64,000 bases of DNA from Haliotis cracherodii (taxonomy: Eukaryota). Position 1 is the stretch's first letter. Every line of letters starts with the position of its first letter. The stretch spans positions 33,294,001-33,358,000 of the forward strand of contig NW_027266330.1 of NCBI RefSeq assembly GCF_022045235.1, read 5' to 3'. A program made the position numbers and the translations under genes. Positions 1 to 22,605 of this stretch are shown here, piece by piece. The notes beneath the pieces were generated by a model. It worked only from the letters and a program-made list of their open reading frames with translations. It had not been told where the DNA came from and searched no databases.

Positions 1-127
1 TCTATTCAAAGAGGGGCTTAACCAAATTCATTCACTCACCAATAAAGGAACGCTAAGATTGCACATTTCTCCTGTTGCCTCTGGTCAGAACGACATTTCT
101 GAAAAGTCCATTTCAAGCTCCTGACAA

Positions 128-430
128 GGTGAGGTGAGGTGAAATTGGGTTTAACGTTGCGTTCAAGATTATTGCACTTATATATTCAAGGTGTGTGCAC
201 GTGTGTGTGTTTGTGTGGCTGCTTGTACTAGTCCGGACCGATGCCGATTTATAGTGCTAGCTCACTGAAATACCATGCCGCAGTTTAACATGAATACCCC
301 ACTCAGAAACAGTATACTGACTCCGAGCCGACCAGTCCTTGTTTTAGCCCCTTAATGCCGAGCGCCAGACAGGGTAACAACAAGTACCATATTTTAACGT
401 CTTTTGGTATGGTTTGGTTTGGTTGGTTTG
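128..430 (-). mobile_element. 5'-truncated SINE with Meta/MESC-like central domain (also ~915-1145, 9048-9355, 9838-10065, 18178-18485, 18968-19260, 26815-27105; + strand ~41315-41600)
   Basis: Reverse strand reads ataccaaaagacgttaaaatatggtacttgttgttaccctgtctggcgctcggcattaagggg...gactggtcggctcggagtcag with a (tcacc)n tail. Dispersed copies present. The domain name is from memory of molluscan SINEs. Confidence 0.7.
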
Positions 431-1389
431 TTGTTTCCTGACACCGACTCCGAACCGACCAGTCCATCTTACCTGTGCTCGTGGGATTCGACAGTGAAAA
501 CTCCTTATACCTTCAACGCCTCGAGCTTTTCTCTTACATGAAGCTGGTACGATGATATATAATCGAAATAACATTCAAAGCGGTGCTCAAACAACTTCAC
601 TCAGTCACCAATAAAGGAACGCTAAGATTGCACATTGCTCCTGTTGCCACTGGTCAGAACGACATTTCTGAAAAGGTCCATTTCAAGCTCCTGACATGGA
701 TAGCCCGTTCGCGAAACTCTGTTTATGCTATCGCTGCCCAAAACAGGTCCCCACAGTTCAATAGCAGCCTGAAACAACGCTTGGAGTTGAACGCACAATC
801 AACTAACTTGTGTTTGCAAACAAGAGATGACTGTCGTGAAGCCGAAGACACTTACCTCAGCTAAATGTTTCCTTTGTTAGTCAATTTGAATTTCTAATAT
901 TTCAACTTTTGTAAGGTGGTGAGGTGAAATGGGGTTGAAATTCGCATCCAAGATTATTGCACTTATATAGCGACGTGCATGCACGTGTGTGTGTTTGTGT
1001 GGCTGCTTGTACTAGTCCGGAGTGATGCCGATTTAAAGTGCTAGATCACAGAGATACCATGCTGCAATTTAACATGAATACCCCTTCAGACACAATATAC
1101 TGACTCCGAGCCGACCAGTCCTTGTTTAAGCCCCTTAATGCCAAGCTCAGTAATATTCCAGCTATATGACGGCCATCTGTAAATAATCGAGTCTGGACAA
1201 GACAATCTAGTGATTGACAACATGAGCATCGATCCACGTAATCAGGATACTATGACATGCATTACCCAAATCAGCGAACTTGACCACCCGATCCCGTTAG
1301 TCGCCTCTTACGACAAACACAGTCGCCTTTTATGGCAAGCATGGGTTGCTGAAGACCTATTCTACCCCGGATCTTCAAAACATTTTTGT

Positions 1390-1700
1390 TGACTGCAGTT
1401 TGACATTGATCAAACAAAGTTCAGTCGTTCAGTCACTGCGAACAACTTTGACCTTCTTGGTCGACCTGGTCTTTCTTCTGAGAATTTGTAATTTGTAGTT
1501 ATGCAGAGCCCTTGATCTGTGACCAGTCATTGCACATAATATCTGTTCATCTACCCATGCCTAGTGAAGACAGTGGTTAATGCGTATTCACGTCAAGCCA
1601 ACTGTTTTACACATTCTCTGTACCGTAGTCACAACCTTATGTTAGCCCAAAGGTTGTTCACAAAACCACAGATCCTATCTAGATGATCAGTTCATCAGTT
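1390..1700 (-). mobile_element. Crypton-like tyrosine-recombinase (DUF3504-type) relic (also ~10320-10630, 19530-19850, 27375-27680 plus 28010-28100)
   Basis: The 10351-10554 copy translates MCKKVGLTGIRINHCL..QAWVDEQILCAMTGHGSRAVHNYK, matching the NHSLR...DEQ...TGH.S..V..Y tyrosine-recombinase C-terminus with an internal deletion. Confidence 0.7.
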
Positions 1701-2014
1701 ACAAAGGACCCGGTTTTGTTTGTTTGTTTGTTGATTAACGCCGTACTCAGCAATATTCAAGCTATTTGTCGGCGGTCTGGACCAGACAATACAGTGATTG
1801 ACATCATCAGCATCGATCCATGCAATTGTGACCACCCGATCCTGTTAGTCGCCTAATACGACACGCATACGATGTAGTGAAGGGAGCAGGCAATGCACAC
1901 GGAGGAACAATTACATTAGACTGATGTGCACGTGTTTACATGTGTTTGGTCTTTTTTTCATTTGATTCTTTTTAAATAAAGAAAACATGGGTTGCTGAAG
2001 ACCTATTTTACCCT

Positions 2015-2300
2015 GGGGGGCACGGGTGGCCCAGTCGTCTAAGGCGCCGCAATTCGCTGTGCAGAGTTGCGTCCCTTGGGCACGCCAGAAACTTATGATT
2101 GTGGGTTCGAATCCCGGTTCGCCCCGATTATGTTTCTAGGTATGTCAGCACCATACCCGTGCTCGTGGGTTTCACCGAAGTGGTAAACGTCTGACACCTG
2201 CATCACTTGGGGCTTTCCTCCCACATTAAACTGACACGCCGTGATATAACTGGAATACTGTTAAAAGCGGCTTTAAACCGAATTCACTCACTCACTCACT
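2015..2300 (+). mobile_element. tRNA-derived SINE with tRNA-Leu/Ser-like head
   Basis: A box tggcccagtcgtctaagg, B box gggttcgaatccc, (actc)n tail, target-site duplication ctattttaccc. Confidence 0.85.
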
Positions 2301-4749
2301 ATTTTACCCCGAAAGTATGTAAAACAGGACCATTTGTCATATATCTGCCCGCTGATCGTCGCGCATGATTATTGACAATCCCAAATGGTTGCACAGCTAT
2401 CACTGCTTTGCTGACTGAAGGTGTTACTATTAATTAGTTCACTCAACTTTTATTCCGTACATGACAAATCACTTTATCGTGGCAGCCTTTGCTCAGTCTA
2501 ATCAACGGTTTCCTGTCTTTTAGGATTCAAGCGGTATCGTGCTTAGGCCATTATATTGATATACATTCTTTTTGTACTTATCAGGACAAGTCAACAACGG
2601 TATAAGGATCTATACCGAAACGTCGCTTTTTACAGTATTAAAGAAGTTGTTATCAATAAAATTGTGTCTACCTTCTATTGTGTTGTCTTCCTTCACCTCA
2701 CCACACCTCACCTCACTTTACCTCACCTCACTTCACTTCACCTCACCTCACCGCAACACAACAAAACGCAACGCATTTCATTGCATTACATTATAACCTC
2801 CAATTTCTCTTGATATCAATGACTATTACTTTGCACAAAGCAGTGACGAGCACCACACCATGAGTATATTCTTGGCAGCACCATACCCATGCTCGTGGAT
2901 TTCACCAAATTGGAAAACGTCTAAGGCCTGCATAACTTTAGGCTTTCCTCCCACATTAAGCTGACACGCCGTATAACTCGAATATTGTTCAAAGCGTCAT
3001 TGAACCAAACGTACTCACTCACTCGGTGGCATAGATTACCCTGTCCAGGGTTGCGTCCCTTGGCTCTGACAGACATCTATGATCACGGGTTTAAACCAAA
3101 CTCACTCACTCACGTGTAATTTTATCTCGACCCCGATGACTATAACCTATACCAAGTCAGTGACCCCGGGTCACCTGCTGGTGATTTAATTCATGAGTGT
3201 TTCACGTTCTAAAGACATTGTTTGGCGTCATCCTCCACTAAAGGAAAACGTCTAAATTTTCTATGTATTATTATTTGGTAGTTATCAAATACACTGTTTA
3301 TTAAAAGATTCATTCTAACCACAAAACGCACTGACATTAACTCTACCATGACGTTGAGGTATAATTGATTCTGATATTTTTTTGCTACGGAAGCCCCTTT
3401 TAAATATATTAAGCCTTTTCATGCACAAAAAAAACGTACCTCTAGTACACGCTATGTCGCCAATGCAAGACAGGTCTCAGATACACACCGACATTAATAG
3501 ACGGACTAGCGTCTGATAGAGGAAATACGGTAGTTTGATTTCGGATGTTTTTATCGATGATGTGATGTTCTAGACAGTAACGCTGCTTCGATGATGAGAT
3601 TATAAGGTTTAACGAAAGCATATCTTTTGCATACAAATGATAATGTTTATGAAACTGTTAGGGACATGTTCAATGAATACACCCAGAACAGGCAATTTTC
3701 TCATTGACAATGAAAGCACAATATAACATTATAAAAAGTGTTGTAAACAACTTTATTCATGACAACATGTTGTTTACAAATTGTTTTGGAATCGACAATC
3801 ATTGCCATGTCCGTCAACCACCAACGTTAGGATTTGGCAGGAGGGGATTTGAAAGTCCATCAGAATACACTCCTCCCTTTGAAAGGCCACGGAAACAATG
3901 TCCCAACATCACTGGAGTCACAGCACGGGCACTTGATCATAACAACTTATCCAACTTGATGAACTTCATTTCTGAACACACATAATTAAGCAAATCATAC
4001 ACAAACCACTGTTTTTTGGCAACAACTGTCACATTTGTTTCACACACTGGCGTCGAATACTGTGAAATCTTGAAATTGGCAGGTCAAATCAAATCCCTCC
4101 TGTCAAAATAGCCGGCTCATCCGCAGCCTAAAAAAGCGGCTGTTCAGTCATTCTCCAGTTCCATTGGCAATAACGTTGCACCATCAGGCTCATTCCCTGT
4201 AAATCTACAAGTTAATGTTCAACCACATCATAGATCTGGGTTGTCATCCTGCTTTGTGTAACTTGTATCTACTCTACAGCGGGACTCAATCAAATTTCAA
4301 AACCCAGAAGGTTTATCTCCTAAATAATATACTTTATGCTCTGTAGATTCGTGAGGATTAGATAATGTTTTCCATCGATGTAACTGTTTTGATTGCTTCA
4401 TGGGGAATGTTTTACCTGGCAAGTGTTTAGTCAACATTTGTCACAAAGACAGACAGCTTGGATTTAGGTTGTGCAAACTATTGATATGAAAGTATAACAT
4501 ATAATGCTTAATGTATTACTTCATAAGACGGCTAAGCATGCTGATTATACCGTAGAAATTAAGAATAATAAGAATTCTGAACTATATTTAAAGTTATGTG
4601 TTATCATAGATTCAAGCAAGTTATAAAATATATTCTAAAAATAATGATGTGGTATTGTTTGATTATATCATATCATGTGCTGTGTTGTGTTGTGTTGTGT
4701 TGTGTTGTGCTGTGTTGTGTGGTGGAGGATTATGGGGCGTGATCCTAGA

Positions 4750-7700
4750 CTAAAGGAAAACTATCACAGGGCCTGTTTCGTTCTTATCGGGATCAATATC
4801 CATTAGCTCGTAATGGGGTGCTTCCGGCTGTTCCACTGGATATTCCTCTTCTTTGTCATCTGTTTCTTGCCTGTAAGAAAAATCATGTGTTTGTTTATCG
4901 TCATTGGTAATAGAACATAGGAATATTATCTCCGTATTCAGGGAGGTGTGGATATGGAGTGTGCAGTGTGGGGAGTTTATCGAAAGAAGGAAATTGTCCC
5001 CGGAAAGCCTTGAAATTCTTTATTATCCTTCAGACTGTTGAAAGAAATAATAACCAGAATATCAAGTTGTCGGTCCTTAGCATATATGTAAAATAGGATA
5101 CGTCGAAGTGCTCAGACGAGAGCACAGATGTTAAATATAACAGAAAGCATTCTTAATTTGTCTTGTTCATTGTTTACATAAAGCACTTGGATATAAACCT
5201 TTTGGTGCGTCCGTAGTATCCAATGCATACAGCTACTATGATGCCAACCAGGCAACACGCTGATGATGTTCCGATAATGATCAGTGGTGGACTCTCAGTG
5301 GTAGGCTCTTTGGAAACAATAATGTTATCAAGTTTAATAATATTGTTAACGTGTACGTACACGTATATGTCGCTTATAAACACCAGAATAGTGGCACAGT
5401 AAAATAGTTTACATGCAGAGCCTCTATATCAATAGGTGCAATACCTAAAACCTTGAACTTGTGACACAAAGTACCTACAAATGGACAGATGTTCATTAGG
5501 ATGCGTAAATAAATTATCTGTGATCAAGTAAAGTGGATGACCAAATGTTTATCATATATTTGTATTCTCCGTTCCTACATCTCAGGGTAAATTAGATTGG
5601 GTCATGTTGGAACATTAGAGAAGGCTTAATGAAAACCCATAAAATCAACACCTGTGACCCATTCTAACCTTATCTCTAAACTAATTGATATAAATTCAAA
5701 CCATACCAGTGTGACATTGAACAAAGTCTAATCATCATTCGTCTGAGGACAGCTGATACCATTTCTACGAGTGATTGATTGAGTGAGTGAGTATGGTTTT
5801 ACGCCTCTTTTAGCAATATTCCAGCAATATCACGGCGGGGGACACCAGAAATGGGCTTCACAAATTTTACCCATGTTGGAAATCGAACCCGGCTCTTCAG
5901 CGTGACGAGCGATCCCGTTCTACGAAGAAGGATATTGGTCATCAATTACATCAACGGAATATCATATTCACACACAAATGAGTTATCTTATAAATTGGTT
6001 GATGTATTATTCTATTCCACTGATGCATCTGTTTTAATCCCTTCACAGGTAATGCCCGTAATTGTCAAGTTTCAGATGGTCAGTGTTTTTGTCAACATCT
6101 TGTTAAGGATGTTTGGGTGTCGTTTTTCTAAACTATTGACATGAATGTATAACATATAATGATCTTTATTACTGTCAGTGCATATCCCACAGGTAGTTCT
6201 CAGAGTGACATTCGTGATCAATGCAGTTTCCAAAGCATGAACAGTCCGACCCAGCTTAACTTGGTGTACAATCATCTACACACGCCCCTGAATCAGTGCA
6301 GGACATATTTACACACTTCGAGTTATATCGAGATGAGCAATTAGTACAATACCATCCGACATTACAACCGTGGATACGATCTCCTGAATAGTTGTTACAT
6401 TCGAGGATGTAATTGTTGGGCAGGGGGATTTCTGGCACATGCTGGGACAGAAGTTGTGTGACAGTTTTTACTGCACGCCTTGTCACACCAGTGACCATAA
6501 TATCCAAATAAATAGGTCTTACCACATGTATTATCCTTGACGCAGGTATCTATAGGACAGTCACTTGAACAGGTAGACTTGCATCTTTGATCAGTAATGT
6601 TGCATCCTTTGGTGCAGGTTCCAGACTCCCTGTCACAAATCCCATCAATGCAAACCCTACAGCTGGTGTTACAAAATGCACCGTAATAACCATTGTCACA
6701 CCCTTTCGCACAGGTTCCGTCCTCAGAGAAACAAATATGCTCGATGCAGTTTTCAAAGCATGAACAGTCTGAACCAGCATATCCTGGAGCGCAGCCAGCT
6801 ACACACGCCCCTGTACCATTGCAGGACATATTTACACACATTGGGTTACACTGAGTTGAGCAGTTGGCTCCATACCACCCGCCAGTACAGCCATGAATAC
6901 AGAACCCTGTCATGTGGTCACATTCGGGACTACACTTCTTTGAAGCATTTCTGTCACATGCGCCAGGACCAGCGCGGCAGTTTTCACTGCACACCTTTTC
7001 ACACCTGTGACCATAAAATCCGCGATTACAGCCTTCTTTGCATCCGGCCTTGCATGTTCCTTTACAATTCTCACATGACATCTCACAGTTGGGACCAGTG
7101 TATGGCGAATGACACTGGTCACATATTCCAGTGCTTCTATTGCACGATTTACATTGTTCAGAACAGTTCTTGCAGTCAAGGCCATAGTAGGAGTCGACGC
7201 ATCCAGAAACACAGGATGAATCCATCTGGCAGTACTTACCGACACACCCTCCTTTGCATTCTGTACACTGTCTCCAATTCTTATCACATGGTATGTTGCA
7301 CTTTGGCCCTTCGAATCCTGAAATACAGCCATTGGTGCATACCGCGATGCCACTGCCTGTTTGTAGTTCACACTTTCTATTTCTGCAGCCATTGCTGCAC
7401 TTAGATGTGCATCTCGTGCCGAAATACCCAAGGTGACACTTTGATGTGCAGTAACCTTTGTCGTTACACTTTGAGCAGTTCTGGCTATAATAGCAGGGTT
7501 TTGCTGAAAAGAAAGAATAAGCATTTAGATTGGACAGAGGTAACCATATAGGCAAAGCTATGAGAGCACATTGTGATGCTTCAGACGACTGGGTAGTATT
7601 CATAGTACTTTTGAAAGTAGGATATTGGATCCATGAGTGATATGGACTTTTGAAAACTTCATGTTAATGATTGAAAATAAGCCCAGGTTTAAATAAATAT

Positions 7701-8137
7701 GCTTTGCTTGCTTGTTTGTTGTTTAACGCCACACTCAGCAATATTCCAGCTATATGACGGCGGTCTGTAAACATTCGAGTCGGGACCATACAATCCAGTG
7801 ATTGACATCATGAGCATCGATCCACGCTATTGGGATACGATGACATGTATCAACCAAGTCAGCGAGCCTGACCGCCCCATCCCATTTGTCTCTTCATAAG
7901 ACAAGCATAGTCACCATGTACGGCAAGCATGGGTTGCTGAAGGCCGATTCTACCCCAGATCTTCACGGGTCGAAATAAATATGTGAAGAATATGATAAAT
8001 CAGCCTCCTTAATAGTCACCAAACCAAGAACGTTTATCTTTCGAAGCATAATCCTGGACGACACAATGATTATCTGCAAACTTACCTTGTATGAAAAGTA
8101 GAACGGATGCAAAACATAGGATCACCACAGAAGTCAT
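4750..8137 (-). CDS. Multi-EGF-like type I membrane receptor (MEGF/SCARF-like Cys-rich ectodomain), copy 1, 420 aa
   Basis: Exons: 8137-8086 (MTSVVILCFASVLLFIQ, donor gtaagt); 7503-6523 (981 nt, phase 1-1, 62 Cys, repeated CxxGxxGxxC); 5307-5199 (TM LIIIGTSSACCLVGIIVAVCIGYY, acceptor aag here versus cag in the other copies); 4870-4750 (RQETDDKEEEYPVEQPEAPHYELMDIDPDKNETGPVIVFL*). All introns are GT-AG with compatible phases; total 1263 nt. Confidence 0.88.
6185..6522 (-). pseudogene. Decayed duplicate of EGF repeats at the start of the intron after the EGF exon (also ~15015-15364, 23898-24044, ~33790-34147)
   Basis: Translates as GHWCDKACSKNC...HGCNVGWYCTNCSSRYNSKCVNMSCTDSGACV, paralogous to the exon. 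Frameshifted in copies 1 and 2, largely deleted in copy 3, open in copy 4. Confidence 0.75.
7703..7969 (-). mobile_element. Short non-autonomous retroelement without a tRNA head (also ~1146-1378, 10066-10298, 19262-19515, 25224-25490, 27105-27355, 35327-35594, 46553-46750)
   Basis: 5' end cccgtgaagatc..ggggtagaat; 3' end ctggaatattgctgagtg..gcgttaaacaacaaac. Flanked by the direct repeat aaataaatatg. Absent from the same intron in copy 2. Confidence 0.8.
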
Positions 8138-8234
8138 GATATGTCTGAAAATGGAAAATGATATATACCCAACTATCAGCACAACAAACATATTACTGTA
8201 TTGCTCGAAATAAGTATATGTTTAATCTACTTAC

Positions 8235-8400
8235 TGGTTATGAGAAAGGAACATTTTCAATGTTGGTGTATCAAGCTATAGCAATTGATATGGCCTCCGG
8301 GTGTTAACTCGTGCGAGTTGTAATCGCGGAATCAGACTTCATATTGACAGTTAACCTTCAACTTCCCTATAAGGGGGAAGTGTGAAATGAATCTGTTCAT
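8235..8400 (-). promoter_or_regulatory. Probable non-coding first exon and proximal promoter of receptor copy 1 (equivalents in each copy)
   Basis: A cag|gtaagt-like donor (ccag|taagt read as gtaagt at 8229-8234) lies ~90 nt upstream of an ttttcag acceptor that is 7 nt before the ATG. The arrangement is kept in all four copies. Confidence 0.45.
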
Positions 8401-10934
8401 TAATAAAACATATGCTCTCTTATGAGAAGAGTTATCTCTTAGTCATGTTGCAAAAATGTACTTAATGATTTATGTTTCTATTAGCTACGTGATCAGACTG
8501 TTTTTGTTGTTTTTCATGTAGAACATGAACACCGTTTCTATTGCGAGTATATTTCAAAATGTTGTTTGTTTTTGTATATCTGACGTGGACGCGTATAGTA
8601 ATGTATTTTTATTCACATATATTGTGAAAGAAAAAGTTTAAAGTTGGAAAAAGACATCACTGGCACAAATGTGGTGTACAGGTTCTCCCCTCATTGTGCA
8701 ACCTGGCAATACACTAAACAACATCCCTCATATCCCTGTGGTTAAAGGCAACAATGGCAGGGATACAAGTTAGAATGTCGTCTAAGGAGACGCAATTAGC
8801 TGTGTAGACCTGATTTGTTTTACCTGTGCTCGTGGGATTCCACGAAGTAAAAACGTCTTATACCTGCAACGCCTCAAGCTTTCTTCTTACATGAAGCTGG
8901 TACGATGTAAAATAATCGTAATTCTATTCAAAGAGGGGCTTAACCAAATTCATTCACTCACCAATAAAGGAACGCTAAGATTGCACATTTCTCCTGTTGC
9001 CACTGGTCAGAACGACATTTCTGAAAAGTCCATTTCAAGCTCCTAGCAAGGTGAGGTGAGGTGAAATTGGGTTTAACGTCGCGTCCAAGATTATTGCACT
9101 TATATATTCAAGTTGTATGCACGTGTGTGTGTTTGTGTGGCTGCTTGTACTAGTCCGGACTGATGCCGATTTATAGTGCTAGCTCACTGAGATACCATGA
9201 TGCAGTTTAACATGAATACCCCACTCAGACATAGTATACTGACTCCTAGCCGATCAGTCCTTCTTTTAGCCCCTTAATGCCGAGCGCCAGACAGGGTAAC
9301 AACAAGTACCATATTTTAACGTCTTTTGGTATGGTTTGGTTTGGTTTGTTTGTTGTTTCCTGACACCGACTCCGAGCCGACCAGTCCATCTTACCTGTGC
9401 TCGTGGGATTCGACAGTGAAAACGTCTTATACCTGCAACGCCTCGAGCTTTCCTCTTACATGAAGCTGGTACGATGATATATAATCGAAATAACATTCAA
9501 AGCGGTACTCAATCAACTTTACTCAGTCACCAATAAAGGAACGCTAAGATTGCACATTGCTCCTGTTGCCACTGGTCAGAACGACATTTCTGAAAAGGTC
9601 CATTTCAAGCTCCTGACATGGATAGCCCGTTCGCGAAACTCTGTATATGCTATCGCTGCCCAAAACATGTCCCCACAGTTCAATAGCAGCCTGCAACAAT
9701 GCATGGAGTTGAATGCACAATCAACTAGCTTGTGTTTGCAAACAAGAGATGACTGTCGTGAAGCCGAAGACACTTACCTCAGCTAAATGTTTCCTTTGTT
9801 AGTCAATTTGAATTTCTAATATTTCAACTATTGTAAGATGGTGAGGTGAAATCGGGTTTAATGTCGCGTCCAAGATTATTGCACTTATATAGCGACGTGC
9901 ATGCACGTGTGTGTGTTTGTGTGGCTGCTTGTACTAGTCCGGAGTGATGCCGATTTAAAGTGCTAGATCACAGAGATACCATGCCGCAATTTAACATGAA
10001 TACCCCTTCAGACACAGTATACTGACTCCGAGCCGACCAGTCCCTGTTAAAGCCCCTTAATACCGAGCTCAGTAATATTCCAGCTATATGACGGCCATCT
10101 GTACATAATCGAGTCTGGACAAGACAGTCTAGTGATTGACAACATGAGCATCGATCCACGTAATTAGGATACTATGACATGCATTACCCAAATCAGCGAA
10201 TCTGACCACCCGATCCCGTTAGTCGCCTATTACGACAAACACAGTCGCCTTTTATGGCAAGCATGGGTTGCTGAAGACCTATTCTACCCCGGATCTTCAA
10301 AACATTTTCGTTGACTGCAGTTTGACATTGATCAAACAAAGTTCAGTCGTTCAGTCACTGCGAACATCACTGACCTTCTCGGTCGACCTGGTCTTTCTTC
10401 TGAGATTTTGTAATTTGTAGTTATGCACAGCCCTTGATCCGTGGCCAGTCATTGCACATAATATCTGTTCATCTACCCATGCCTGGTGAAGACAGTGGTT
10501 AATGCGTATTCCCGTCAAGCCAACTTTTTTACACATTCTCTGTACCGTAGTCACAACCTTATGTTAGCCCAAAGGTTGTTCACAAAACCACAGATCCTAT
10601 CTAGATGATCTGTTCATCAGTTACAAAGGATTCGGTTTTGTTTGTTTGTTTGTTGATTAACGCCGTACTCAGCAATATTCAAGCTATTTGTCGGCGTTCT
10701 GGACCAGACAATACAGTGATTGACATCATCAGCATCGATCCACGCAATTGTGACCACCCGATCCTGTTAGTCGCCTAATACGACACGCATACGATGTAGT
10801 GAAGGGAGCAGGCAATGCACACGGAGGAACAATTACATTAGACTGATGTGCACGTGTGTACATGTGTTTGGTCTTTTTTCATTTGATTCTTTTTAAATAA
10901 AGAAAACATGGGTTGCTGAAGACCTATTTTACCC

Positions 10935-11221
10935 TGGGGGGCACGGGTGGCCCAGTTGTCTAAGGCGCCGCAATTCGCTGTGCAGAGTTGCGTCTCTTGG
11001 GTACGCCAGAAACCTATGATTGTGGGTTCGAATCCCGGTTCGCCCCGATTATGTTTCTAGGTGTGTCAGCACCATACCCGTGCTCGTGGGTTTCACCGAA
11101 GTGGTAAACGTCTGACACCTGCATCACTTGGGGCTTTCCTTCCACATTAAGCTGACACGCCGTGATATAACTGGAATACTGTTAAAAGCGGCGTTAAACC
11201 GAATTCACTCACTCACTCACT
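10935..11221 (+). mobile_element. Same tRNA-derived SINE in unit 2
   Basis: Near-identical to 2015-2300 with the same TSD; empty site in unit 3 at ~20152-20163. Confidence 0.85.
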
Positions 11222-13611
11222 ATTTTACCCCGAAAGTATGAAAACAGGACCATTTGTCATATATCTGCCCGCTGATCGTCGCGCATGATTATTGACAATC
11301 CCAAATGGTTGCACAGCTGTCACTGCTTTGCTGACTGAAGGTGTTACTATTAATTAGTTCACTCAACTTTTATTCAGTACATGACAAATCACTTTATCAT
11401 GGCAGCCTTTACTCAGTCTAATCAATGGTTTCCTGTCTTTTATGATTCAAGCGGTATCGTGCTTAGGCCATTATATTGATATACATTTTTTTGTACTTAT
11501 CAGGACAAGTCAACAACGGTATAAGGATCTATACCGAAACGTCGCTTTTTACAGTATTAAAGAAGTTGTTATCAATAAAATTGTGTCTACCTTCTATTGT
11601 GTTGTCTTCCTTCACCTCACCACACCTCACCTCACTTCACCTCACCTCACCTCACCGCAACGCAACGCAACGCAACGCAACGCAACGCAACGCAACGCAA
11701 CGCAACGCAACACAACGCATTGCATTACATTATAACCTCCAGTTTCTCTTGATATCAATGACTATTACTTTCCACCAAGCAGTGACGTGAACCACACCAT
11801 TAGTATGTTTCTTGGCAGAACCATACCCAAGCTCGTAGATTTCACCAGATTGGGTAACGTCTAAGACATAACTTAAGGCTTTCCTTCCACATTAAGCTGA
11901 CATGCCGTATAACTGGAATATTGTTCAAAGCGTCAATAAACCAAACGTACTCACTCGGTGGCACAGATGACCTTGTCCAGTTGCGTCCCTTGGCTACGCC
12001 AGAAACCTATGATCACGGGTTTAAACCAAACTCTATCACTCACTCACTTGTAATTTTATCTCGACCCCGATGACTATTACCTATACTAAGTCAGTGACCC
12101 GGGGTCACCTGCTGGTGATTTATCATGTATTATTAAATGGTAGTTATCAAATACACTGTTTATTAAAATATTCATTCTAACCACACAACTCACTGACTTT
12201 AATTCTACCATGACATTAAAGAATGTTTGAATCTGATGTTTCTTGGGCTACGGAAGCCCCTTTTAAATATATTAAGCATTTTCACGATCACCCATAGGAA
12301 CTTAAAGCATTAAGCATTACCTCTATTACACGCTGGGTCGCCAATGCAAGCCAGGTCTCTGATACACGCCGAAATTAATAGACGGCCTAGCGTCTGATAG
12401 AGGAAATACGGTATTTTGATAACGGAGGTTTTTATCGGTGATGTGATGTTCTAGGTAGTAACCTTGCTTCGATGATGATATTATAAGGCTCGACGAAAAT
12501 ATATATTTTGCATACAAATGATAATGTTTATAAAACTGTTAGGGACATGTTCGATGAACAGACCCAGAACAGGCAATTTCCTCATTGACAATGAAAGTAC
12601 AATATAACATTATAAAATGTGTTGTTAAAAACTTTATTCATGACAACATATTGTTTACAAACAGTTTTGTAATCGACAATCATTGCCATGTCCGTCAACC
12701 ACAAACGTTAGGTGGAGGGGGTTTGAAAGTCCATCAGAATACACTCCTCCCTTTGAAAGGCCACGGAAACAATGTCCCAACATCACTTGAGCCACAGAAC
12801 GGGCACTTGATCATAACAACTTATCAAACTTGATGAACTTCATTTCTGAAGACACATAATTAAGGAAATCATACACAAACCACTGTTTTTGGGCAATAAC
12901 TGTCACATTTGTTTCACACACTGGCATCGAATACTGTGAAATCTTGAAACTGACAGGTCAAATCACATCCCTCCTGTCAAAATAGCCGGCTCATCCGCAG
13001 CCTAAAAATGGAGCTGTTCAGTCATTCTCCAGTTCAATTGGCAACCACGTTGCACCATCAGGCTCATTCCCTGTAAATCTACAAGTTACTCTTCAACCAC
13101 ATCATAGATCAGGGTTGTCATCTTGCTTCTTGTAACTTGTATCTACTCTACAGCGGGACTCAATCACATTTCAAAACACAGTAGGTTTATCTCCTAAATA
13201 ATATCCTTTTTGCTCTGTAGTTTCGTGAGGATTAAATAATGTTTTCCATCGATGTAACTGTTTTGATTTCTTCATGGGAAATGTAACAACATTTGTCACA
13301 AAGACAGACAGCTTGGGTTAAGGTTTGGAAACTATTGATATGAAAGTATAACATATAATGCTTAATGCATTACTTCATAAGACGGCCAAACATGCTTATT
13401 TTTCCGTAGAAATTAAGAATAATAAGAATTCTGAACTATATTTAAAGTTATGTGTTATCATAGATTCAAGCAAGTTATAAAATATATTCTAAATATAACT
13501 ATGTGGTATTGCTTGATTATATTATATCATGTGTTGTGTTGTGTTGTTGTGTTGTGTTGTGTTGTGTTTTGCTGTGTTGTGTGGTGGGAGATTATGGAGC
13601 GTTATCCTACA

Positions 13612-16600
13612 CTAAAGGAAAACTATCACAGGGCCTGTTTCATTCTTATCAGGATCAATATCCATCAGTTCGTAATGGTGTGCTTCCGGCTGTCCCACTG
13701 GATATTCCTCTTCTTTGTCATCTGTTTCTTGCCTGTAAGAAAAATCATGTGTTTGTTTATCGTCATTGGTAATAGGACATATGAATATTATCTCCGTATT
13801 CAGGGAGGTGTGGATGTGGAGTGTGGAGTGTGGGGAGTTTATCGAAAGAAGGAAATTATCCCCAGAAAGGCTTGAAAAATATTATTATGCTTCAGACTGT
13901 TGAAAGAAATATTAAACAGAAAATCAAATTGTCGGTCCTTAGCATATATGTAAAATAGGATACGTCATAGTGCTCAGATGAGAGCATATATGTTAAATAT
14001 TACAGAAAGCATTCTTAATTTGTCTTGTTCATTGTTTACATAAAACACTTGAATATAAACCTTTTGGTGCGTTCGTAGCATCCAATGCATACAGCTACCA
14101 TGATGCCAACCAGGCAACACGCTGATGATGTTCCGATAATGATCAGTGGAAGGCTCTCATTGGTAGGCTCTGTGGAAACAATAATGTTATCAAGTTTAAT
14201 TATATTGTTAATGTGTACGTACACGTATATGTCGCTTATAAACACCAGAATAGTGGCACAGTAAAATAGTTTGCATATCAATAGGTGTAACACCTAAAAC
14301 CTTGAACTTATGACACAAAGTACCTACAAATGGACAGATGTTCAAATAGGATGTGTAAATAAATTATCTGTGATCAAGTAAAGTGGATGACCTAAATGTT
14401 TATCATATATTTGTATTCTCCGTTCCTACATCTCAGGGTAAATTAGATTGGGTCATGTTGGAACATTAGAGAAGGCTTAATGAAAACCCATAAAATCAAC
14501 ACCTGTGACCCATTCTAACCTTATCTCTAAACTTATTGTTATAAATCCAAACCATACCAGTGTGACATTGAACAAAGTTTAATCATCATTCATCTGGAGA
14601 CAGCTGATAACCTTTCTACGAGTGGGTGAGTGAGTATGGTTTTACGCCGCTTTTAGCAATATTCCAGCAATATCATGGCGGGGGACACCAGAAACGGGCT
14701 TCACACATTGTACCCATGTCGGGAATCGGCGTGATGAGCGATCGCTTTCTACGAAGAAGGATATTGGTCATCAATTACATCAACGGAATATCATATTCAC
14801 ACACAAATGAGTTATCTTATAAATTGGTTGATGTATTATTCTATTCCATTGCTGCATCTGTTTTAATTCCTTCACGGGCAATGCCAGGAAATTGTCAGGT
14901 TTCAGATGGTCAGTGTTTTGTCAACATCATATTAAAGAAGTTTGGGTTTAGTTTTTCGAAACTATTGACATGAATGTATAACATATAATGATCTTTATTA
15001 CCGTCAATGCATATCCCACAGGTAGTTCTCAGAGTGACATTCGTGATCAATGCAGTTTCCAAAGCATGAAAAGCCCGACCCAGTTTAACGTGGTGTACAA
15101 TCATCTACACATGCCCCTAAATCAGTGCAGGACATATTTACACACTTCGAGTTTCATCGAGATGAGCAATTAGTACAATACCATCCGACATTACAACCAT
15201 GGAACGATCTCCTGAATAGTTGTCACATTCGAGGATACAATTGTTGGGAGAGGGGGGATTTCTGGCACATGCTGGGACAGAAGTTGGTTGAGTGCCAGCG
15301 CGACAGTTTTTACTGCACATCTTTGCACACCAGTAACCATGATATCCAAATAAATAGGTCTTACCACATGTAATTTCCTTGACGCAGGTATCTATAGGAC
15401 AGTCACTTGAACAGGTAGACTTGCATCTTTGATCAGTAATGTTGCATCCGTTGGTGCAGGTTCCAGACTCCTGCTCACAAATCCCATCAATGCAAACCTC
15501 ACAGCTGGCGTTACAAAATGCACCGTAATAACCATTGTCACACCCTTTCGCACAGGTTCCGTTCTCAGAGAAACAAATATGCTCGTTGCAATTTTCAAAG
15601 CATGAACAGTCTGAACCAGCATATCCTGGTGCACAGCCAGCTACACACGCCCCTGAATCAGTGCAGGACATATTTACACACCTCGGGTTACATTGAGTTG
15701 AGCAGTTGGCTCCAAACCACCCGCCATTACAGCCATGAATACAGATTCCTGTCATGTTGCCACATTCGGGACTACAATTGTTTGAAGCATTTCTGTCACA
15801 TGCATCAAGGCCAGCGCGGCAGTTTTCACTGCACACTTTTTCACACCAGTGACCATAAAATCCGCGATTACAACCTTCTTTGCATCCGGCCTTGCATGTT
15901 CCTTTACAATTCTCACATGACATCTCACAGTTGGGACCAGTGTATGGCGAATGACACTTGTCACATATTCCAGTGCTTCTATTGCACGATTTACATTGTT
16001 CAGAACAGTTCTTGCAGTCACGGCCATAGTAGGAGTCCACGCATCCAGAAACACAGGATGAATTCAGCTGGCAGTACTTACCGACACAACCTCCTTTGCA
16101 TTCTGTACACTGTCTCCAATTCTCATCACATGGTATGTTGCACCTTGGACCTTGGAATCCTGAAATACAGCCATTGGTGCATACCTCGGTGCCACTGTTT
16201 GTGATTTCACAAAATTTATATCTGCAGCCACTGCTGCACTTAGATGTGCATGTCTTTCCGAAATACCCAGTGTGACACTTTGATGTGCAGTAACCTGTGT
16301 CGTCACAGCTAACGCAGTTCTGCCAATAATCGCGGGGTGTTGCTGAAAAAAAAGAATAAGCATTTATATCGGACAGAGGTAAGCAAATAGGCAAATCTAT
16401 GAGAGCATATTGTGATCCTTCAGACGACTGGGTAGTAGTCATAGTACTTTTGAAAGTAGGATATTGGATCCCTGAGTGCTATGAGAGCAAATTGTGAAGC
16501 TTCAGTGAGTGAGTGAGTATGGTTTTACGCCATTTTTTAGCAATATTCCAGTAATATCAGGGCGGAGGACACCAGAAATGGGCTTCACACATTGTGACCA

Positions 16601-16709
16601 TTTCGGGAATCAAACACGGGTCTTAAGCATGACGAGCGAACGCTTTAGCCACTAGGCTTCCGACCTGCGAAGCTTCAGGCGACTGGGTAGTAGTAATAGT
16701 ACTTTTAGC

Positions 16710-16759
<50 letters not shown>

Positions 16760-16863
16760 CAGCGTCAGTAGTAGTAGTAACTCTGGCAGTAGTAGTTGTA
16801 CTGGTAGTAGTAATAGTAGTTGTAGTAGCGGCAGTTGTAATAGCAGTAGTAGCAGTGGTCGTG

Positions 16864-16906
<43 letters not shown>

Positions 16907-17248
16907 CTGGGCCAATAATGAACGTTTCTTCTTATAATAGTAATGTTTATTTTGAAACAAACTACAATGTTTAATATATCTTTATTCTTCGCAACACTTA
17001 GTCAATTTATGAAAGTAGGATAGTGAACCGTGAGTTATTCCCCTTTCAAAAAAACTCCATGTGGGGATTGTATAAGTCCAGGTTGAAATAAGTACGTGAA
17101 GAATATGATAAATTAGACTCCTATAGTCACAAAACCAAGAACGTTTATCTTTCGAAGCATAATCCTGGTCGAGACAATGCATATCTGCAAACTTACCTTG
17201 TATGAAAAGTAGAACGGATGCAAAACATAGGATCACCACAGAAGTCAT
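13612..17248 (-). CDS. Multi-EGF-like type I membrane receptor, copy 2, 419 aa
   Basis: Exons 17248-17197, 16342-15365 (978 nt), 14169-14061, 13732-13612. Frame open, GT-AG introns. The first ectodomain Cys is replaced by Arg. Confidence 0.88.
16505..16667 (-). mobile_element. Short tRNA-derived SINE, specific to the copy 2 intron
   Basis: Same family as 48174-48336; TSD gaagcttcag. Confidence 0.8.
16706..16905. repeat. (GTA)n microsatellite expansion
   Basis: Imperfect GTA trinucleotide run; it explains the poly-L and poly-V ORFs. Confidence 0.95.
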
Positions 17249-20200
17249 GATATGTCTGAAAATGAAAAATAATATAAACCCACCAATCAGCACAGCAAAC
17301 ATATTACTGTATTACTCGAAATAAGTATATGTTTAATCTACTTACTGGTTATGAGAAAGGAACATTTTCAATGTTGGTGTATCAAGCTACAACAATTGAT
17401 ATGGCCTCCGGGTGTTTACTTGTGCGAGTTGTAATCGCGGAATCAGACTTCATATTGACAGTTAACCTTCAACTTCCCTATAAGGGGGAACTAGGAAATG
17501 AATCTGCTTATTAATAAAACATGTGCTCTCTTATGAGAAGAGTTATCTCTTAGTCATGTTGCCAAAATGTACTTAATGATTTCTCTTTCTATTAGCTACG
17601 TGATCAGACTGTTTTTGTTGTTTTTTCATGTAGAACATTACCAAATGATTCCCGTTAGAGAACCGTTTTTATTGCGAGTATATTTCAAAATGTTGTTTGT
17701 TTTTGTATATCTGACGTGGACGCGTATAGTAATGTATTTTACTCACATAAATTGTGAAAGAAAAAGTTTAAAGTTGGAAAAAGACATCACTGGCACAAAT
17801 GTGGTGTACAGGCTCTCCCCTCATTGTGCAACCTGGCAATACACTGTACAACATCCCTCATATCCCTGGGGTTAAAGGCAACAATGGCAGGGATACAAGT
17901 TAGAATGTCGTCTAAGGAGACGCAATTAGCAATGTAGACCTGATTTGTCTTACCTGTGCTCGTGGGATTCGACAAAGTAAAAACGTCTTATACCTGCAAC
18001 GCCTCAAGCTTTCTTCTTACATGAAGCTGGTACGATGTAAAATAATCGTAATTCTATTCAAAGAGGGGCTTAACCAAATTCATTCACTCACCAATAAAGG
18101 AACGCTAAGATTGCACATTTCTCCTGTTGCCACTGGTCAGAACGACATTTCTGAAAAGTCCATTTCAAGCTCCTGACAAGGTGAGGTGAGGTGAAATTGG
18201 GTTTAACGTCGCGTCCGAGATTATTGCACTTATATATTCAAGGTGTATGCACGTGTGTGTGTTTGTGTGGCTGCTTGTACTAGTCCGGACTGATGCCGAT
18301 TTATAGTGCTAGCTCACAGAGATACCATGCCGCAGTTTAACATGAATACCCCACTCAGACATATTATACTGACTCCTAGCCGACCAGTCCTTCTTTTAGC
18401 CCCTTAATGCCGAGCGCCAGACAGGGTAACAACAAGTACCATATTTTAACGTCTTTTGGTATGGTTTGGTTTGGTTTGTTTGTTGTTTCCTGACACCGAC
18501 TCCGAGCCGACCAGTCCATCTTACCTGTGCTCGTGGGATTCGACAGTGAAAACGTCTTATACCTTCAACGCCTCAAGCTTTCGTCTTACATGAAGCTGGT
18601 ACGATGATATATAATCGAAATAACATTCAAAGCGGTGCTCAAACAACTTCACTCAGTCACCAATAAAGGAACGCTAAGATTGCACATTGCTCCTGTTGCC
18701 ACTGGTCAGAACGACATTTCTGAAAAGGTCCATTTCAAGCTCCTGACAGGGATAGCCCGTTCGCGAAACTCTGTATATGCTATCGCTGCCCAAAACATGT
18801 CCCCACAGTTCAATAGCAGCCTGAAACAACGCTTGGAGTTGAACGCACAATCAACTAACTTGTGTTTGCAAACAAGAGATGACTGTCGTGAAGCCGAAGA
18901 CACTTACCTCAGCTAAATGTTTCCTTTGTTAGTCAATTTGAATTTCTAATATTTCAACTATTGTAAGATGGTGAGGTGAAATCGGGTTTAAATTCGCGTC
19001 CAAGATTATTGCACTTATATAGCAACGTGCATGCACCTGTGTGTGTTTGTGTGGCTGCTTGTACTAGTCCGGACTGATGCCGATTTATAGTGCTAGCTCA
19101 CTGAGATACCATGCCGCAATTTAACATGAATACCCCTTCAGACACAGTTTACTGACTCCGAGCCGACCAGTCCTTGTTTAAGGCCTTAATGCCGAGCGCC
19201 AGACGGGGTAACAACAAGTACCATCTTTTAACGTCTTTTGGTATGGTTTGGTTTTGTTTTTGTTTTTTTGTTTAACGCCGCACTCAGTAATATTCCAGCT
19301 ATATGACGGCCATCTGTAAATAATCGAGTCTGGACAAGACAATCCAGTGATTGACAACATGAGTATCGATCCACGTAATTAGGATACTATGACATGCATT
19401 AACCAAGTCAGATAGCCTGACATCCCGATCCCGTTAGTCGCCTCTTACGACAAACACAGTCGCCTTTTATGGCAAGCATGGGTTGCTGAAGACCTATTCT
19501 ACCCCGGATCTTCACAACATTTTCGTTGACTGCAGTTTGACATTGATCAAACAAAGTTCAGTCGTTCAGTCACTGCGAACATCACTGACCTTCTCGGTCG
19601 ACCTGGTCTTTCTTCTGAGAATTTGTAATTTGTAGTTATGCACAGCCCATGATCCGTGGCCAGTCATTGCACATAATATCTGTTCATCTACCCATGCCTA
19701 GTGAAGACAGTTAGCAGTGGTTAATGCGTATTCACGTCAAGCCAACTGTTTTACACATTCTCTGTACCGTAGTAACAACCTTATTTTAGCCCAAAGGTTG
19801 TTCACAAAACCACAGATTCTATCTAGATGATCTGTTCATCAGTCACAAAGGACTCGGTTTTGTTTGTTTGTTTGTTGATTAACGCCACACTCAGCAATAT
19901 TCAAGCTATTTGTCGGCGTTCTGGACCAGACAATACAGTGATTGACATCATCAGCATCGATCCATGCAATTGTGATCACCCGATCCCGTTAGTCCCCTAA
20001 TACGACAAGCATAAGATATTGTAGTGAAGGGTGCAGGCAATGCACACGGAGAAACAATTACATAAGACTGATGTGCACGTGTGTACATGTGTTTGGTCTT
20101 TTTTTTCATTTGATTCTATTTTAGATTAAGAAAACATGGGTTGCTGAAGACCTATTTTACCCCGAAAGTATGAAAAGAAGACCATTTGTCATATATCTGC

Positions 20201-22605
20201 CCGCTGGTCGTCGCGCATGATTATTGACAATCCCAAATGGTTGCACAGCTATCACTGCTTCGCTGACTGAAGGCGTTACTATTTATTAGTTCACTCAACT
20301 TTTATTCAGTACATGACAAATCACTTTATCGTGGCAGCCTTTGCTCAGTCTAATCAACGGTTTCCTGTCTTTTAGGATTCAAGCGGTATCGTGCTTAGGC
20401 CATTATACTGATATACATTCTTTTTGTACTTATCAGGACAAGTCAACAACGGTATAAGGATCTGTACCGAAACGTCGCTTTTTACAGTATTAAAGAAGTT
20501 GTTATCAATAAAATTGTGTCTACCTTCTATTGTGTTGTCTTCCTTCACCTCACCACAACTCACCTCACTTCACCTCACCTCACCGCAACACAACACAACG
20601 CAACGCATTTCATCACCTCCAATTTCTCTTGATATCAATGACTATTACTTTGCACAAAGCAGTGACGAGCACCACACATATTCTTGGCAGCACCATACCC
20701 ATGCTCGTGGATTTCACCAAATTGGAAAACGTCTAAGGCCTGCATAACTTTAGGCTTTCCTCCCACATTAAGCTGACACGCCGTGTAACTGGAATATTGT
20801 TCAAAGCGTCATTGAACCAAACATACTCACTCACTCGATGGCATAGATGACCTTGTCCAGAGTTGCGTCCCTTGGCTCCCCCAGACATCTATGATCACGG
20901 GTTTAAACCAAACTCACTCACTCAGTTGTAATTTTATCTCGACCCCGATGACTATAACCTATACCAAGTCAGTGACCTGGGGTCACCTGCTGGTGATTTA
21001 ATTCATGAGTGTTTCACGTTCTAAAGACATTGTTTGACGTCATCCTCCACTAAACGAAAACGTCTAAATTTTCTATGTATTATTAAATGGTGGTTATAAA
21101 ATACATTGTTTATTAAAAGATTCATTCTAACCACAAAACGCACTGACATTAACTCTACTATGACGTTGAGGTATAATTGATTCTGATAATGTTTTGCCTC
21201 GAAAAGCCCCTTTTAAATATATTAAGCCTTTTCATGCACAAAAAAACGTGCATATGAATACTTCGAATACCTACAAGTTGATTCATAAATAATGGCTGCC
21301 GTTCGATTACCTATAGGAACTTCAAGCATTAAGCACTACCTCTAGTACACGCCATGTCGCAAATGCAAGACAGGTCTCAGATACACACCGACATTAATAG
21401 ACGGCCTAGCCTCTGATAGAGGAAATACGGTAGTTTGATATCGGATGTTTTTATCGATGATGTGATGTTCTAGGCAGTAACCCTGCTTCCATGATGAGTT
21501 TATAAGGCTTAACGAAAGCATATCTTTTGCATACAAATGATAATGTTTATGAAACTGTTAGGGACATGTTCGATGAACAGACCCAGAACAGGCAATTTCC
21601 TCATTGACAATGAAAGTACAATATAACATTATAAAAAGTGTTGTAAAAAACTTCATTCATGACAACATGTTGTTTACAAACTGTTTTGTAATCGACAATC
21701 ATTGCCATGTCCGTCAACCACCAACGTTAGGATTTGGCAGGAGGGGATTTGAAAGTCCATCAGAATACACTCCTCCCATTGAAAGGCTACGAAAACAATG
21801 TCCCAACATCACTGGAGTCACAGCACGGGCACTTGATCATAACAACTTATCCAACTTGATGAACTTCCTTTCTGAAGACACATAATTAAGCAAATCATAC
21901 ACAAACCACTGTTTTGGGGCAACAACTGTCACATTTGTTTCACACACTGGCATCGAATACTGTTATCTTGAAATTGACAGGTCAAATCAGATCCCTCCTG
22001 TCAAAAAAGCTGGCTCATCCGCAGCCTAAAAAGCGGCTGTTCATTCATTCTCCAGTTCCATTTCCAATCACGTTGCACCATCAGGCTCATTCCTGGTAAA
22101 TCGACAAGTAAGTCTTCAACCACATCATAGATCGGGGTTGTCATCTTGCTTTTTGTAACTTGTATCTACTCTACAGCGGGACTCCATCAAATTTCAAAAC
22201 ACAGTAGGTTTATCTCCTATACTTTATGCTCTGTAGATTCGTGAGGATTAGATAATGTTTTCCATCGATGTAACTGTTTTGATTTCTTCATGGGGAATGT
22301 TTTAACTGACAAGTGTTTAGTCAACATTTGTCACAAAGACAGACAGCTTGGGTTAGGTTTTGCAAACTATTGATATGAGAGTATGACATATAATGTTTTA
22401 GGCATTACTGAATAAGACGGCTAAGCATGCTGATTATACCGTAGAAATTAAGAATAATAAGAATTCTGAACTATATTTAAAGTTATGAGTTATCATAGAT
22501 TCAAGCAAGTTATAAAATATATTCTAAAAATAACTAAGTGTTGTGTTGTGTTGTGTTGTGTTGTGCTGTGTTGTGTGGTGGGAGATTATGGGGCGTGATC
22601 CTACA

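What the first reader, a model, noticed from the sequence alone, without database searches (positions are those of the whole stretch)
7264..7503. Hypervariable N-terminal tip on a conserved stalk
Manual alignment of copy 1 against copy 3 gives 32 differences in the first 80 ectodomain residues but only 20 in the remaining 247. The signal peptides are identical except one site in copy 4. Changes sit between fixed Cys: CYYSQNCSKC / RDYWQNCVSC / CKFSHSCLRC / CDYSRNCVSC, and RKCELQTGSGIAVC / KFCEITN-SGTEVC / MSCNLSSDSGTDTC / RSCELLTDGGTEVC. Position 65 is E/Q/Y/Q. The tip looks more diverged than the neighbouring intron. Inference: diversifying selection on a ligand-binding surface.
Basis: partly seen in the sequence, partly recalled or inferred. 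Interest (0 to 1): 0.85.

Follow-up and report, generated by a model that had tools for sequence, protein, structure and literature searches.

The report
Fast-evolving tip on abalone EGF receptors
Six neighbouring black-abalone genes encode cysteine-rich cell-surface receptors whose outermost two modules differ far more between copies than the rest of the gene. Part of this is because that stretch is older, and part is because amino-acid changes there seem to be favoured, as in many immune-type receptor families.

Summary
Copy 1 against copy 3 gives 32 amino-acid differences in the tip and 20 in the remaining 247 residues.

- **The locus.** It is a tandem array of six (not four) ~9 kb units in Haliotis cracherodii. 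RefSeq models at least four of the six as "cell death abnormality protein 1-like". Each gene has a signal-peptide exon, one 981-nt exon with 62 cysteines (about ten EGF-like modules), a membrane exon and a short tail exon.
- **The divergence island.** 45 of 79 tip codons vary against 49 of 247 in the stalk. Tip dN is 0.173 and dS 0.106. Stalk dN is 0.041 and dS 0.062.
- **The tip is partly older.** dS is 1.7 times that of the stalk. The last 100 nt of the neighbouring intron are nearly as diverged (0.126), against 0.05 across the rest of the unit.
- **Amino-acid change still exceeds the local neutral rate.** The ratio is 1.46 (P = 0.02), or 1.78 without the invariant cysteines (P = 0.0005). 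Site models put 40-47% of tip codons at omega 3-5, but heavy recombination inflates those tests.
- **What it is not.** It is not CED-1/MEGF10 (no EMI domain, no NPxY). Its weak nearest solved relative is human SCARF1.

Ligand binding, expression and population variation could not be tested. This is a new member of a known kind.

The parts
7264..7503 (-).
   Evidence: 45 of 79 codons vary among six copies; dN 0.173, dS 0.106
6523..7503 (-). Exon 2 of g3: whole ectodomain, 326 full codons plus two split codons, 62 Cys, phase 1-1
   Evidence: acceptor TCAG, donor GTAAGA; matches RefSeq models of sister copies
8086..8137 (-). Exon 1 coding part of g3: signal peptide MTSVVILCFASVLLFIQ plus 1 nt
5199..5307 (-). 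Transmembrane exon of g3
   Evidence: tblastn with RefSeq protein P0001
4750..4870 (-). Cytoplasmic tail exon of g3 (YELM motif, stop codon included)
15365..16342 (-).
24045..25025 (-).
34148..35128 (-).
17197..17248 (-). Signal-peptide exon of g4
25606..25657 (-). Signal-peptide exon of g5
35709..35760 (-). Signal-peptide exon of g6 (one S-to-P change)
7504..7603 (-). Last 100 nt of intron 1 of g3: non-coding flank that shares the raised divergence (JC 0.126)
1..36660 (-). The four window units of the six-unit tandem array (~9 kb each), mosaic in their mutual similarity

Best explanation
What it is. Six tandem paralogues encode type-I membrane proteins. Each has a rod of about ten disulfide-locked EGF-like modules, a membrane helix and a short tail. 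The membrane-distal two modules form a divergence island.

Two processes together explain the island.
1. Exchange between units (gene conversion or unequal crossing-over) keeps most of each 9 kb unit about 95% alike. It has not homogenised the 5' end of exon 2 or the adjoining end of intron 1, so that stretch coalesces two to three times deeper.
2. On top of that, replacements in the loops between the fixed cysteines have accumulated faster than local neutral sites. So differences between the tips are favoured, and conversion tracts that would erase them are probably removed by selection.

Shown here: the island, the fixed scaffold, the mosaic units, and dN above the local neutral rate.

Inferred: the tip is the recognition surface and each paralogue has its own target. 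The most likely targets are microbial or altered-self ligands taken up by haemocytes, as for class F scavenger receptors and the insect receptor Eater.
For: - Island. Nucleotide divergence is 0.155-0.183 in the tip against about 0.05 across the unit.
- Rates. dN is 4.2 times the stalk value and dS 1.7 times.
- Excess over neutral. dN over local neutral is 1.46 (P = 0.022) and 1.78 for non-Cys codons (P = 0.0005). This test uses pairwise distances and needs no tree.
- Other estimators. Four independent pairwise estimators give tip omega 1.6-2.2.
- Likelihood. My M0 gives tip omega 1.84. M2a puts 40% of tip codons at omega 5.1 (2dL = 20.5). With three outgroup paralogues it puts 47% at omega 3.3 (2dL = 21.6), while stalk omega is 0.58.
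- Scaffold under constraint. At the non-Cys replacement rates, about 16 Cys-changing events are expected in the tip and about 13 in the stalk. One and zero are observed (arithmetic).
- Exchange between units. The closest pair changes along the unit, and Rm >= 13 in the stalk.
- No outside donor. Each tip's best genomic matches are its array mates at 79-87%, then outgroups at 72-78%.
- No intrinsic hypermutation. Against outgroup paralogues, tip dS is 0.5-0.9 of stalk dS.
- Cross-species pattern. A H. rufescens protein of the same cluster differs from the six copies by 25-32 stalk residues, against 14-27 within the species. Its tip distance (16-33) lies inside the within-species range (18-34), as expected if only the stalk evolves in concert.
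- Charge. Tip net charge ranges from 0 to +8, while the stalk stays at -5 to -8.
Against: - The mean tip omega is only borderline above 1 (bootstrap CI 0.98-3.02; M0 LRT P = 0.048 and 0.10).
- A conservative tree-free count gives 77 replacement and 16 silent events, a ratio of 1.15 (P = 0.36).
- Recombination inflates the site-model tests. The stalk also 'passes' them (2dL = 32), which shows they are not trustworthy here.
- GC3 is not higher in the stalk (0.42) than in the tip (0.49). So the GC-biased signature used to support conversion in protocadherin clusters is absent.
- Other clusters of the same family show no tip excess (C67 4.5-5.0 Mb) or a tip omega just below 1 (C26).
- No expression, population or binding data could be obtained.
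- In SCARF1 the mapped ligand site is not at the N-terminus (PMC11563577).
Confidence: 0.55

Rival explanations
1. Old segment only. The tip and the adjoining intron simply escaped homogenisation, for example because conversion tracts end in the transposon-filled, structurally different intron 1. The tip then drifts under relaxed constraint (omega about 1 outside the scaffold), with no adaptive diversification.
For: - Local neutral divergence is raised: tip dS 0.106 against 0.062, and intron 0.126 against a 0.05 background.
- Intron 1 carries two different insertion structures (g1, g2, g4 against g3, g5, g6) right next to the tip, which could block tracts.
- The conservative event count gives a ratio of 1.15, not significant.
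- Stalk omega within the array is already 0.66-1.08.
Against: - dN rises 4.2-fold and dS only 1.7-fold. P(omega tip <= omega stalk) = 0.01.
- Non-Cys dN exceeds pooled local neutral divergence, ratio 1.78, P = 0.0005.
- 21 tip codons carry three or more amino-acid states.
Confidence: 0.25
2. Same selection, different job. The tip sets partner specificity between receptors (dimer or cell-to-cell recognition, as in clustered protocadherins, or gamete or tissue recognition) rather than binding foreign ligands.
For: - The N-terminal fragments of SCARF1 solved in PMC11563577 form homodimers.
- The model's residues 1-154 align loosely to SCARF1 64-209.
- A diversified N-terminus with a homogenised remainder is documented for protocadherin clusters (PMC1852091).
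Against: - The structural match is weak (Z 4.1, rmsd 8.5).
- No interaction was tested.
- The short tail with a YxxPhi-type motif suits uptake as well as adhesion.
Confidence: 0.13
3. Local hypermutation. A mutational process targeted at the 5' end of exon 2 raises both silent and replacement changes there.
For: Both dS and the adjoining intron are raised. The transition/transversion ratio in the tip is low, 0.61 against 1.28 in the stalk.
Against: - Against outgroup paralogues, tip dS is not raised (0.5-0.9 of the stalk).
- Non-coding sequence of the unit has a similar transition/transversion ratio, 0.76-0.89.
- The cysteines stay fixed.
Confidence: 0.04
4. Decaying pseudogenes or an assembly artefact.
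For: Stalk omega is near 1 within the array. Copy g4 has lost one cysteine and one codon.
Against: - All six exon-2 frames are open with intact splice sites.
- 61-62 cysteines are kept in each copy against about 29 expected losses.
- RefSeq models four of them.
- All six units are distinct throughout.
Confidence: 0.03

Closest known systems
Class F scavenger receptors (human SCARF1/SREC-I, PDB 8HNA/8HN0; PMC11563577)
   Same: Type-I membrane protein whose ectodomain is only EGF-like modules starting right after the signal peptide. It is the best solved match by profile (E = 4.9e-6) and by Foldseek (E = 1.4e-5).
   Different: - The similarity is weak (VIA Z 4.1; no phmmer hit).
- The tail is about 45 residues, not the long tail of SCARF1 (own knowledge).
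- SCARF1 binds modified LDL through arginines in the middle region, not at the tip.
- SCARF1 is not known to me as a tandem array with a variable tip.
CED-1 / Draper / MEGF10 engulfment receptors (the RefSeq name of these genes)
   Same: Single-pass receptors with many atypical EGF repeats.
   Different: No EMI domain was found (Pfam) and there is no NPxY. The name reflects cysteine-rich composition, not orthology.
Drosophila Nimrod receptors Eater and NimC1 (PMC6852320, PMC4359741)
   Same: EGF-like repeat receptors of blood cells used in bacterial uptake. Eater's N-terminal repeats are the reported microbe-binding part, and insect recognition genes are reported to evolve fast (own knowledge).
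   Different: There is no CCxGY motif and no CC dipeptide in the ectodomain. The repeat type and the tail differ.
Clustered protocadherins (PMC1852091 and the work it cites)
   Same: Tandem paralogues in which regional gene conversion homogenises the membrane-proximal part while the N-terminal specificity domains stay diverse under diversifying selection. This is the same evolutionary pattern.
   Different: The fold is unrelated (cadherin). The protocadherin conversion signature of raised GC3 is not seen here.

Membership tests
Class F scavenger receptor (SCARF/SREC) | Signal peptide, ectodomain made only of EGF-like modules, single membrane helix | tested here: met
   Exons mapped with RefSeq proteins. 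62 Cys in 326 residues. The AF2 model shows EGF-type hairpins.
Class F scavenger receptor (SCARF/SREC) | Detectable homology to SCARF1/2 | tested here: inconclusive
   Profile against PDB: SCARF1 is the best hit, E = 4.9e-6. Foldseek E = 1.4e-5. But the single sequence finds nothing and VIA Z is only 4.1.
Class F scavenger receptor (SCARF/SREC) | Long cytoplasmic tail | tested here: not met
   g2-g6 have about 45 residues after the membrane helix. g1 has a different, acidic tail of about 96 residues.
Class F scavenger receptor (SCARF/SREC) | Binding of polyanionic ligands (modified LDL, teichoic acid) | not testable with these tools
   Only tip net charge (0 to +8) could be computed.
CED-1 / Draper / MEGF10 | N-terminal EMI domain | tested here: not met
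   Pfam scans of exon 2 and of the full RefSeq protein give only a sub-threshold EGF_TEN hit.
CED-1 / Draper / MEGF10 | NPxY and YxxL signalling motifs in the tail | tested here: not met
   The printed tail sequences show no NPxY, only YELM.
Nimrod (Eater, NimC) | CCxGY motif followed by NIM repeats | tested here: not met
   No CC dipeptide in any of the six ectodomains.
Genes under diversifying selection with regional concerted evolution | dN above dS or the local neutral rate in the variable part | tested here: met
   Ratio 1.46 (P = 0.022), or 1.78 for non-Cys codons (P = 0.0005). It is borderline in M0 tests.
Genes under diversifying selection with regional concerted evolution | Evidence of exchange between paralogues outside the variable part | tested here: met
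   The nearest neighbour switches along the unit. Rm >= 13 in the stalk. The stalk is closer within the species than to the H. rufescens copy. The GC3 signature is absent.

The most novel reading that the evidence does not exclude
The array may be one visible piece of a germline-encoded variable-receptor system in abalone. One ectodomain exon type has over a hundred near-full-length matches in the genome and 1,265 first-look candidates. Its phase 1-1 exon is joined to different signalling tails: the short YELM tail, a long acidic tail in g1, and an ankyrin tail elsewhere according to an earlier unchecked note. Its membrane-distal modules carry a paralogue-specific recognition code, kept apart by selection against gene conversion. 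If alleles vary as much as paralogues do, this would be a repertoire comparable in logic to snail FREPs or insect Nimrod receptors.
Probability: 0.25. Interest if true: 0.7.

Novelty: new member of a known kind. Interest (0 to 1): 0.42.

Why it matters
Black abalone is critically endangered, largely through withering syndrome, a bacterial disease (own knowledge). Its recognition receptors are poorly known.

A tandem array with a constrained cysteine scaffold and tips that change faster than neutral sites gives a concrete, small set of candidates for testing how a mollusc without antibodies diversifies recognition: six genes and two modules of about 35 residues each.

It is also a clean example of two things. 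Regional concerted evolution can exaggerate a 'hypervariable' contrast. And the RefSeq name (CED-1-like) is misleading. The pattern itself is familiar from other receptor families, so the finding is useful rather than surprising.

Tried and rejected
- **DNA of orthologues.** No DNA of the H. rufescens copies could be fetched, so no between-species dN/dS was possible. Only one protein-level comparison was made.
- **Expression and alleles.** Splice sites rest on conserved signals and on RefSeq proteins.
- **Mapping on the structure.** Model coordinates are not exposed, so whether the variable sites form one face could not be tested. They were placed only by loop.
- **Outside donors.** Ectopic donors for the tips were sought in the whole genome and none was found.
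- **GC3 test for conversion.** Negative.
- **A family-wide variable tip.** Rejected. The C67 4.5-5.0 Mb cluster shows tip dN about equal to stalk dN.
- **Site-model LRTs on the whole exon** (2dL = 73). I do not rely on them because one tree was forced on a mosaic.
- **Pfam.** It gives no domain above threshold.
- **Literature.** Searches found no description of this array or of variable tips in mollusc MEGF/SREC-like genes. The library is partial, so this is weak evidence of novelty.
- **Not done on purpose.** The N run at 49009-49165 was left alone.

Full report
**1. What is there**

The window is G000:C67:33294001-33358000 of a 1.18 Gb abalone genome. The contig length (63,398,646) and exact protein identities show it is the Haliotis cracherodii assembly annotated by RefSeq.

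The finding lies on the minus strand. Window 7264-7503 is the first 240 nt of a 981-nt exon, 6523-7503. The exon has acceptor cag|CA and donor G|GTAAGA, and both introns are in phase 1.

Upstream is a 52-nt coding exon for the signal peptide MTSVVILCFASVLLFIQ (8086-8137). Downstream are a membrane-helix exon (5199-5307) and a tail exon (4750-4870) ending in ...YELMDIDPDKNETGPVIVFL.

The unit is repeated about every 9 kb. A whole-genome search shows six copies, not four. Two more (g1, g2) lie just before the window.

RefSeq models g1, g2, g5 and g6 as "cell death abnormality protein 1-like" (XP_071084354.1, XP_071086266.1, XP_071086722.1, XP_071086710.1). g3 and g4 were not in that protein cluster.

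g1 uses a different membrane exon and a long acidic tail. g2-g6 share the short YELM tail.

**2.

- All quoted strings are present.
- Copy 1 against copy 3 gives 32 and 20 differences, as stated.
- Among six copies, 45 of 79 tip codons vary against 49 of 247 in the stalk (Fisher P = 1.3e-9). 21 tip codons have three or more states against 4 in the stalk.
- 62 cysteine columns are fixed apart from Cys3-to-Arg in g4.
- A profile along the aligned 9 kb units shows nucleotide divergence of 0.155-0.183 in the tip. Almost everywhere else that aligns cleanly it is about 0.05.

**3. Is it selection or age?**

Pairwise rates. NG86 over 15 pairs gives tip dN 0.173 and dS 0.106, and stalk dN 0.041 and dS 0.062. 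dN rises 4.2-fold and dS 1.7-fold. Codon bootstraps need no tree and are therefore robust to recombination. They give:
- tip omega 1.64 (CI 0.98-3.02; P(omega<=1) = 0.03);
- 1.84 without the cysteine codons (P = 0.011);
- stalk omega 0.66;
- P(tip omega <= stalk omega) = 0.01;
- P(tip dS <= stalk dS) = 0.078.

Other estimators. Biopython's NG86, LWL85, YN00 and ML estimators give tip omega 1.6-2.2 and stalk omega 0.66-1.4. This agrees with my own codon-likelihood code, which gives tip M0 omega 1.84 (P = 0.048 against 1) and stalk omega 1.05.

Outgroups. With three outgroup paralogues from the C67 4.5-4.7 Mb cluster, tip omega is 1.43 (P = 0.10 against 1). Fixing tip omega at 0.45, below the stalk estimate, costs 2dL = 32. 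Stalk omega is 0.58.

Site models. They favour a positively selected class in the tip: M1a against M2a gives 2dL = 20.5 with 40% of codons at omega 5.1. With outgroups it gives 21.6 with 47% at omega 3.3. The high-posterior sites sit in the loops between cysteines. The densest run is the long hairpin loop of module 2 (residues 42-54).

I discount these tests. Four-gamete analysis gives at least 5 recombination events in the tip and 13 in the stalk. The stalk 'passes' the same tests through two-state sites shuffled among copies.

The neighbouring intron. The last 100 nt of intron 1 align cleanly in all six copies. Their JC distance is 0.126 (CI 0.085-0.174), far above the 0.05 background and similar to tip dS.

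Pooled neutral reference. Pooling the tip's synonymous sites with those 100 intron sites gives 0.119. Tip dN still exceeds it: ratio 1.46 (CI 1.01-2.16, P = 0.022). For non-cysteine codons the ratio is 1.78 (CI 1.22-2.57, P = 0.0005).

Conservative count. The most conservative tree-free count takes a minimum spanning set of codon states and the paths with fewest replacements. It gives 77 replacement and 16 silent events, a ratio of 1.15, not significant. The stalk gives 0.59.

Scaffold constraint. At the non-cysteine replacement rates, about 16 cysteine-changing events would be expected in the tip and about 13 in the stalk. One and zero are seen (arithmetic). The genes are therefore under constraint and are not decaying.

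**4. Why the tip is older**

- The units are mosaics. The closest pair of copies changes from block to block along the 9 kb, while in the tip block no pair is closer than 0.093.
- Intron 1 carries two different insertion structures right next to the tip. g1, g2 and g4 have an (ACT)n run plus a tRNA-like SINE. g3, g5 and g6 have another element. These could also stop conversion tracts.
- No tip was imported from elsewhere. Each tip's best genomic matches are its array mates (79-87%), then the outgroup cluster (72-78%).
- The tip has no intrinsically higher mutation rate. Against outgroup paralogues its dS is 0.5-0.9 of the stalk's.
- A H. rufescens protein of the same 90% cluster (XP_046378128.2) differs from the six copies by 25-32 stalk residues, more than the copies differ from each other (14-27). 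Its tip distances (16-33) fall inside the within-species range. This is what concerted evolution of the stalk alone predicts, though it rests on one sequence.
- GC3 is not higher in the stalk (0.42 against 0.49). So the GC-biased conversion signature used for protocadherins (PMC1852091) is absent.

**5. What the protein is**

- Pfam gives nothing above threshold, and in particular no EMI domain. There is no NPxY and no CCxGY. So despite its name it is not a CED-1/Draper/MEGF10 or Nimrod family member.
- A profile of 39 family members finds human SCARF1 as the best solved relative (E = 4.9e-6).
- An AlphaFold2 model (mean pLDDT 78) has SCARF1's N-terminal fragment as its best Foldseek hit (E = 1.4e-5). 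The structural alignment is weak (Z 4.1; laminin-type EGF modules reach Z 4.7).
- In SCARF1 the modified-LDL site is a pair of arginine clusters in the middle region, and the N-terminal fragments solved there form homodimers (PMC11563577). So analogy does not by itself make the tip a ligand site.
- Tip net charge varies from 0 to +8 and N-glycosylation sequons come and go, while the stalk stays at -5 to -8.

**6. Scope**

The ectodomain exon type is hugely expanded. The search listed 150 matches and 1,265 first-look candidates. The variable tip is not a family property. The C67 4.5-5.0 Mb cluster shows equal tip and stalk dN. A C26 cluster shows a weaker version, with tip dN 0.174 against stalk 0.046 and tip omega about 0.9.

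**7. Verdict**

The contrast is a compound of regional escape from homogenisation and a moderate, statistically supported excess of replacements in the loops. The binding role is inferred.

The pattern matches a known evolutionary kind: protocadherin clusters, and many immune receptor arrays (the latter from my own knowledge). I found no published description for these abalone genes.

**8. Limits**

There are no orthologue DNA, reads, expression or allele data.
Exons were searched by reference, and full-length proteins were those returned by the database.

Noticed in passing
window 6196-6522 (g3) and the matching stretch after exon 2 in g2-g6; in g6 the frame stays open to 33777: Past the exon-2 donor the 'intron' continues in frame as a decayed extra EGF-like module. 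It carries stops in g3 and g4 but is open in g6, giving a 483-aa ORF. Outgroup paralogues L025 and L030 have exons of 381-382 codons. This suggests the donor site arose inside a formerly longer exon.
   Followed up: partly
G000:C67:33281889-33282008 and 33278881-33279171 (before the window): The edge copy g1 keeps the same signal peptide and ectodomain exon but is spliced to a different membrane exon and a long acidic tail (RefSeq XP_071084354.1, 489 aa). One ectodomain exon type therefore serves different tails.
   Followed up: partly
window 7650-8000, 16650-17100 and the matching parts of the other units: Intron 1 holds two alternative insertion structures: an (ACT/GTA)n run of about 220 nt plus a tRNA-like SINE in g1, g2 and g4, and another element in the opposite orientation in g3, g5 and g6.
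   Followed up: partly
window 29156-29842 (+), 38378-39420 (-), 41806-42219 (-): Fragments of Tc1/mariner-type transposases (Pfam DDE_3 and HTH_Tnp_Tc3_2). The first lies in a ~1.5 kb insertion present only in the g6 unit.
   Followed up: partly
window 50248-50676 (-): An open frame with a strong match to the farnesoic acid O-methyltransferase domain (Methyltransf_FA, E = 2.7e-36), probably an exon of a neighbouring gene.
   Followed up: no
window 53444-54218, 57670-59059, 59076-59682, 63380-63918: Four minisatellites with periods of 63, 24/52, 54 and 20 nt. Their long ORFs are repeat artefacts.
   Followed up: no
window 4750-4870 and copies: The tail exon is nearly invariant around YELMDIDPDKNETGPVIVFL in g2-g6. 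YELM fits a YxxPhi sorting motif or an SH2-type motif.
   Followed up: partly
   Followed up: no
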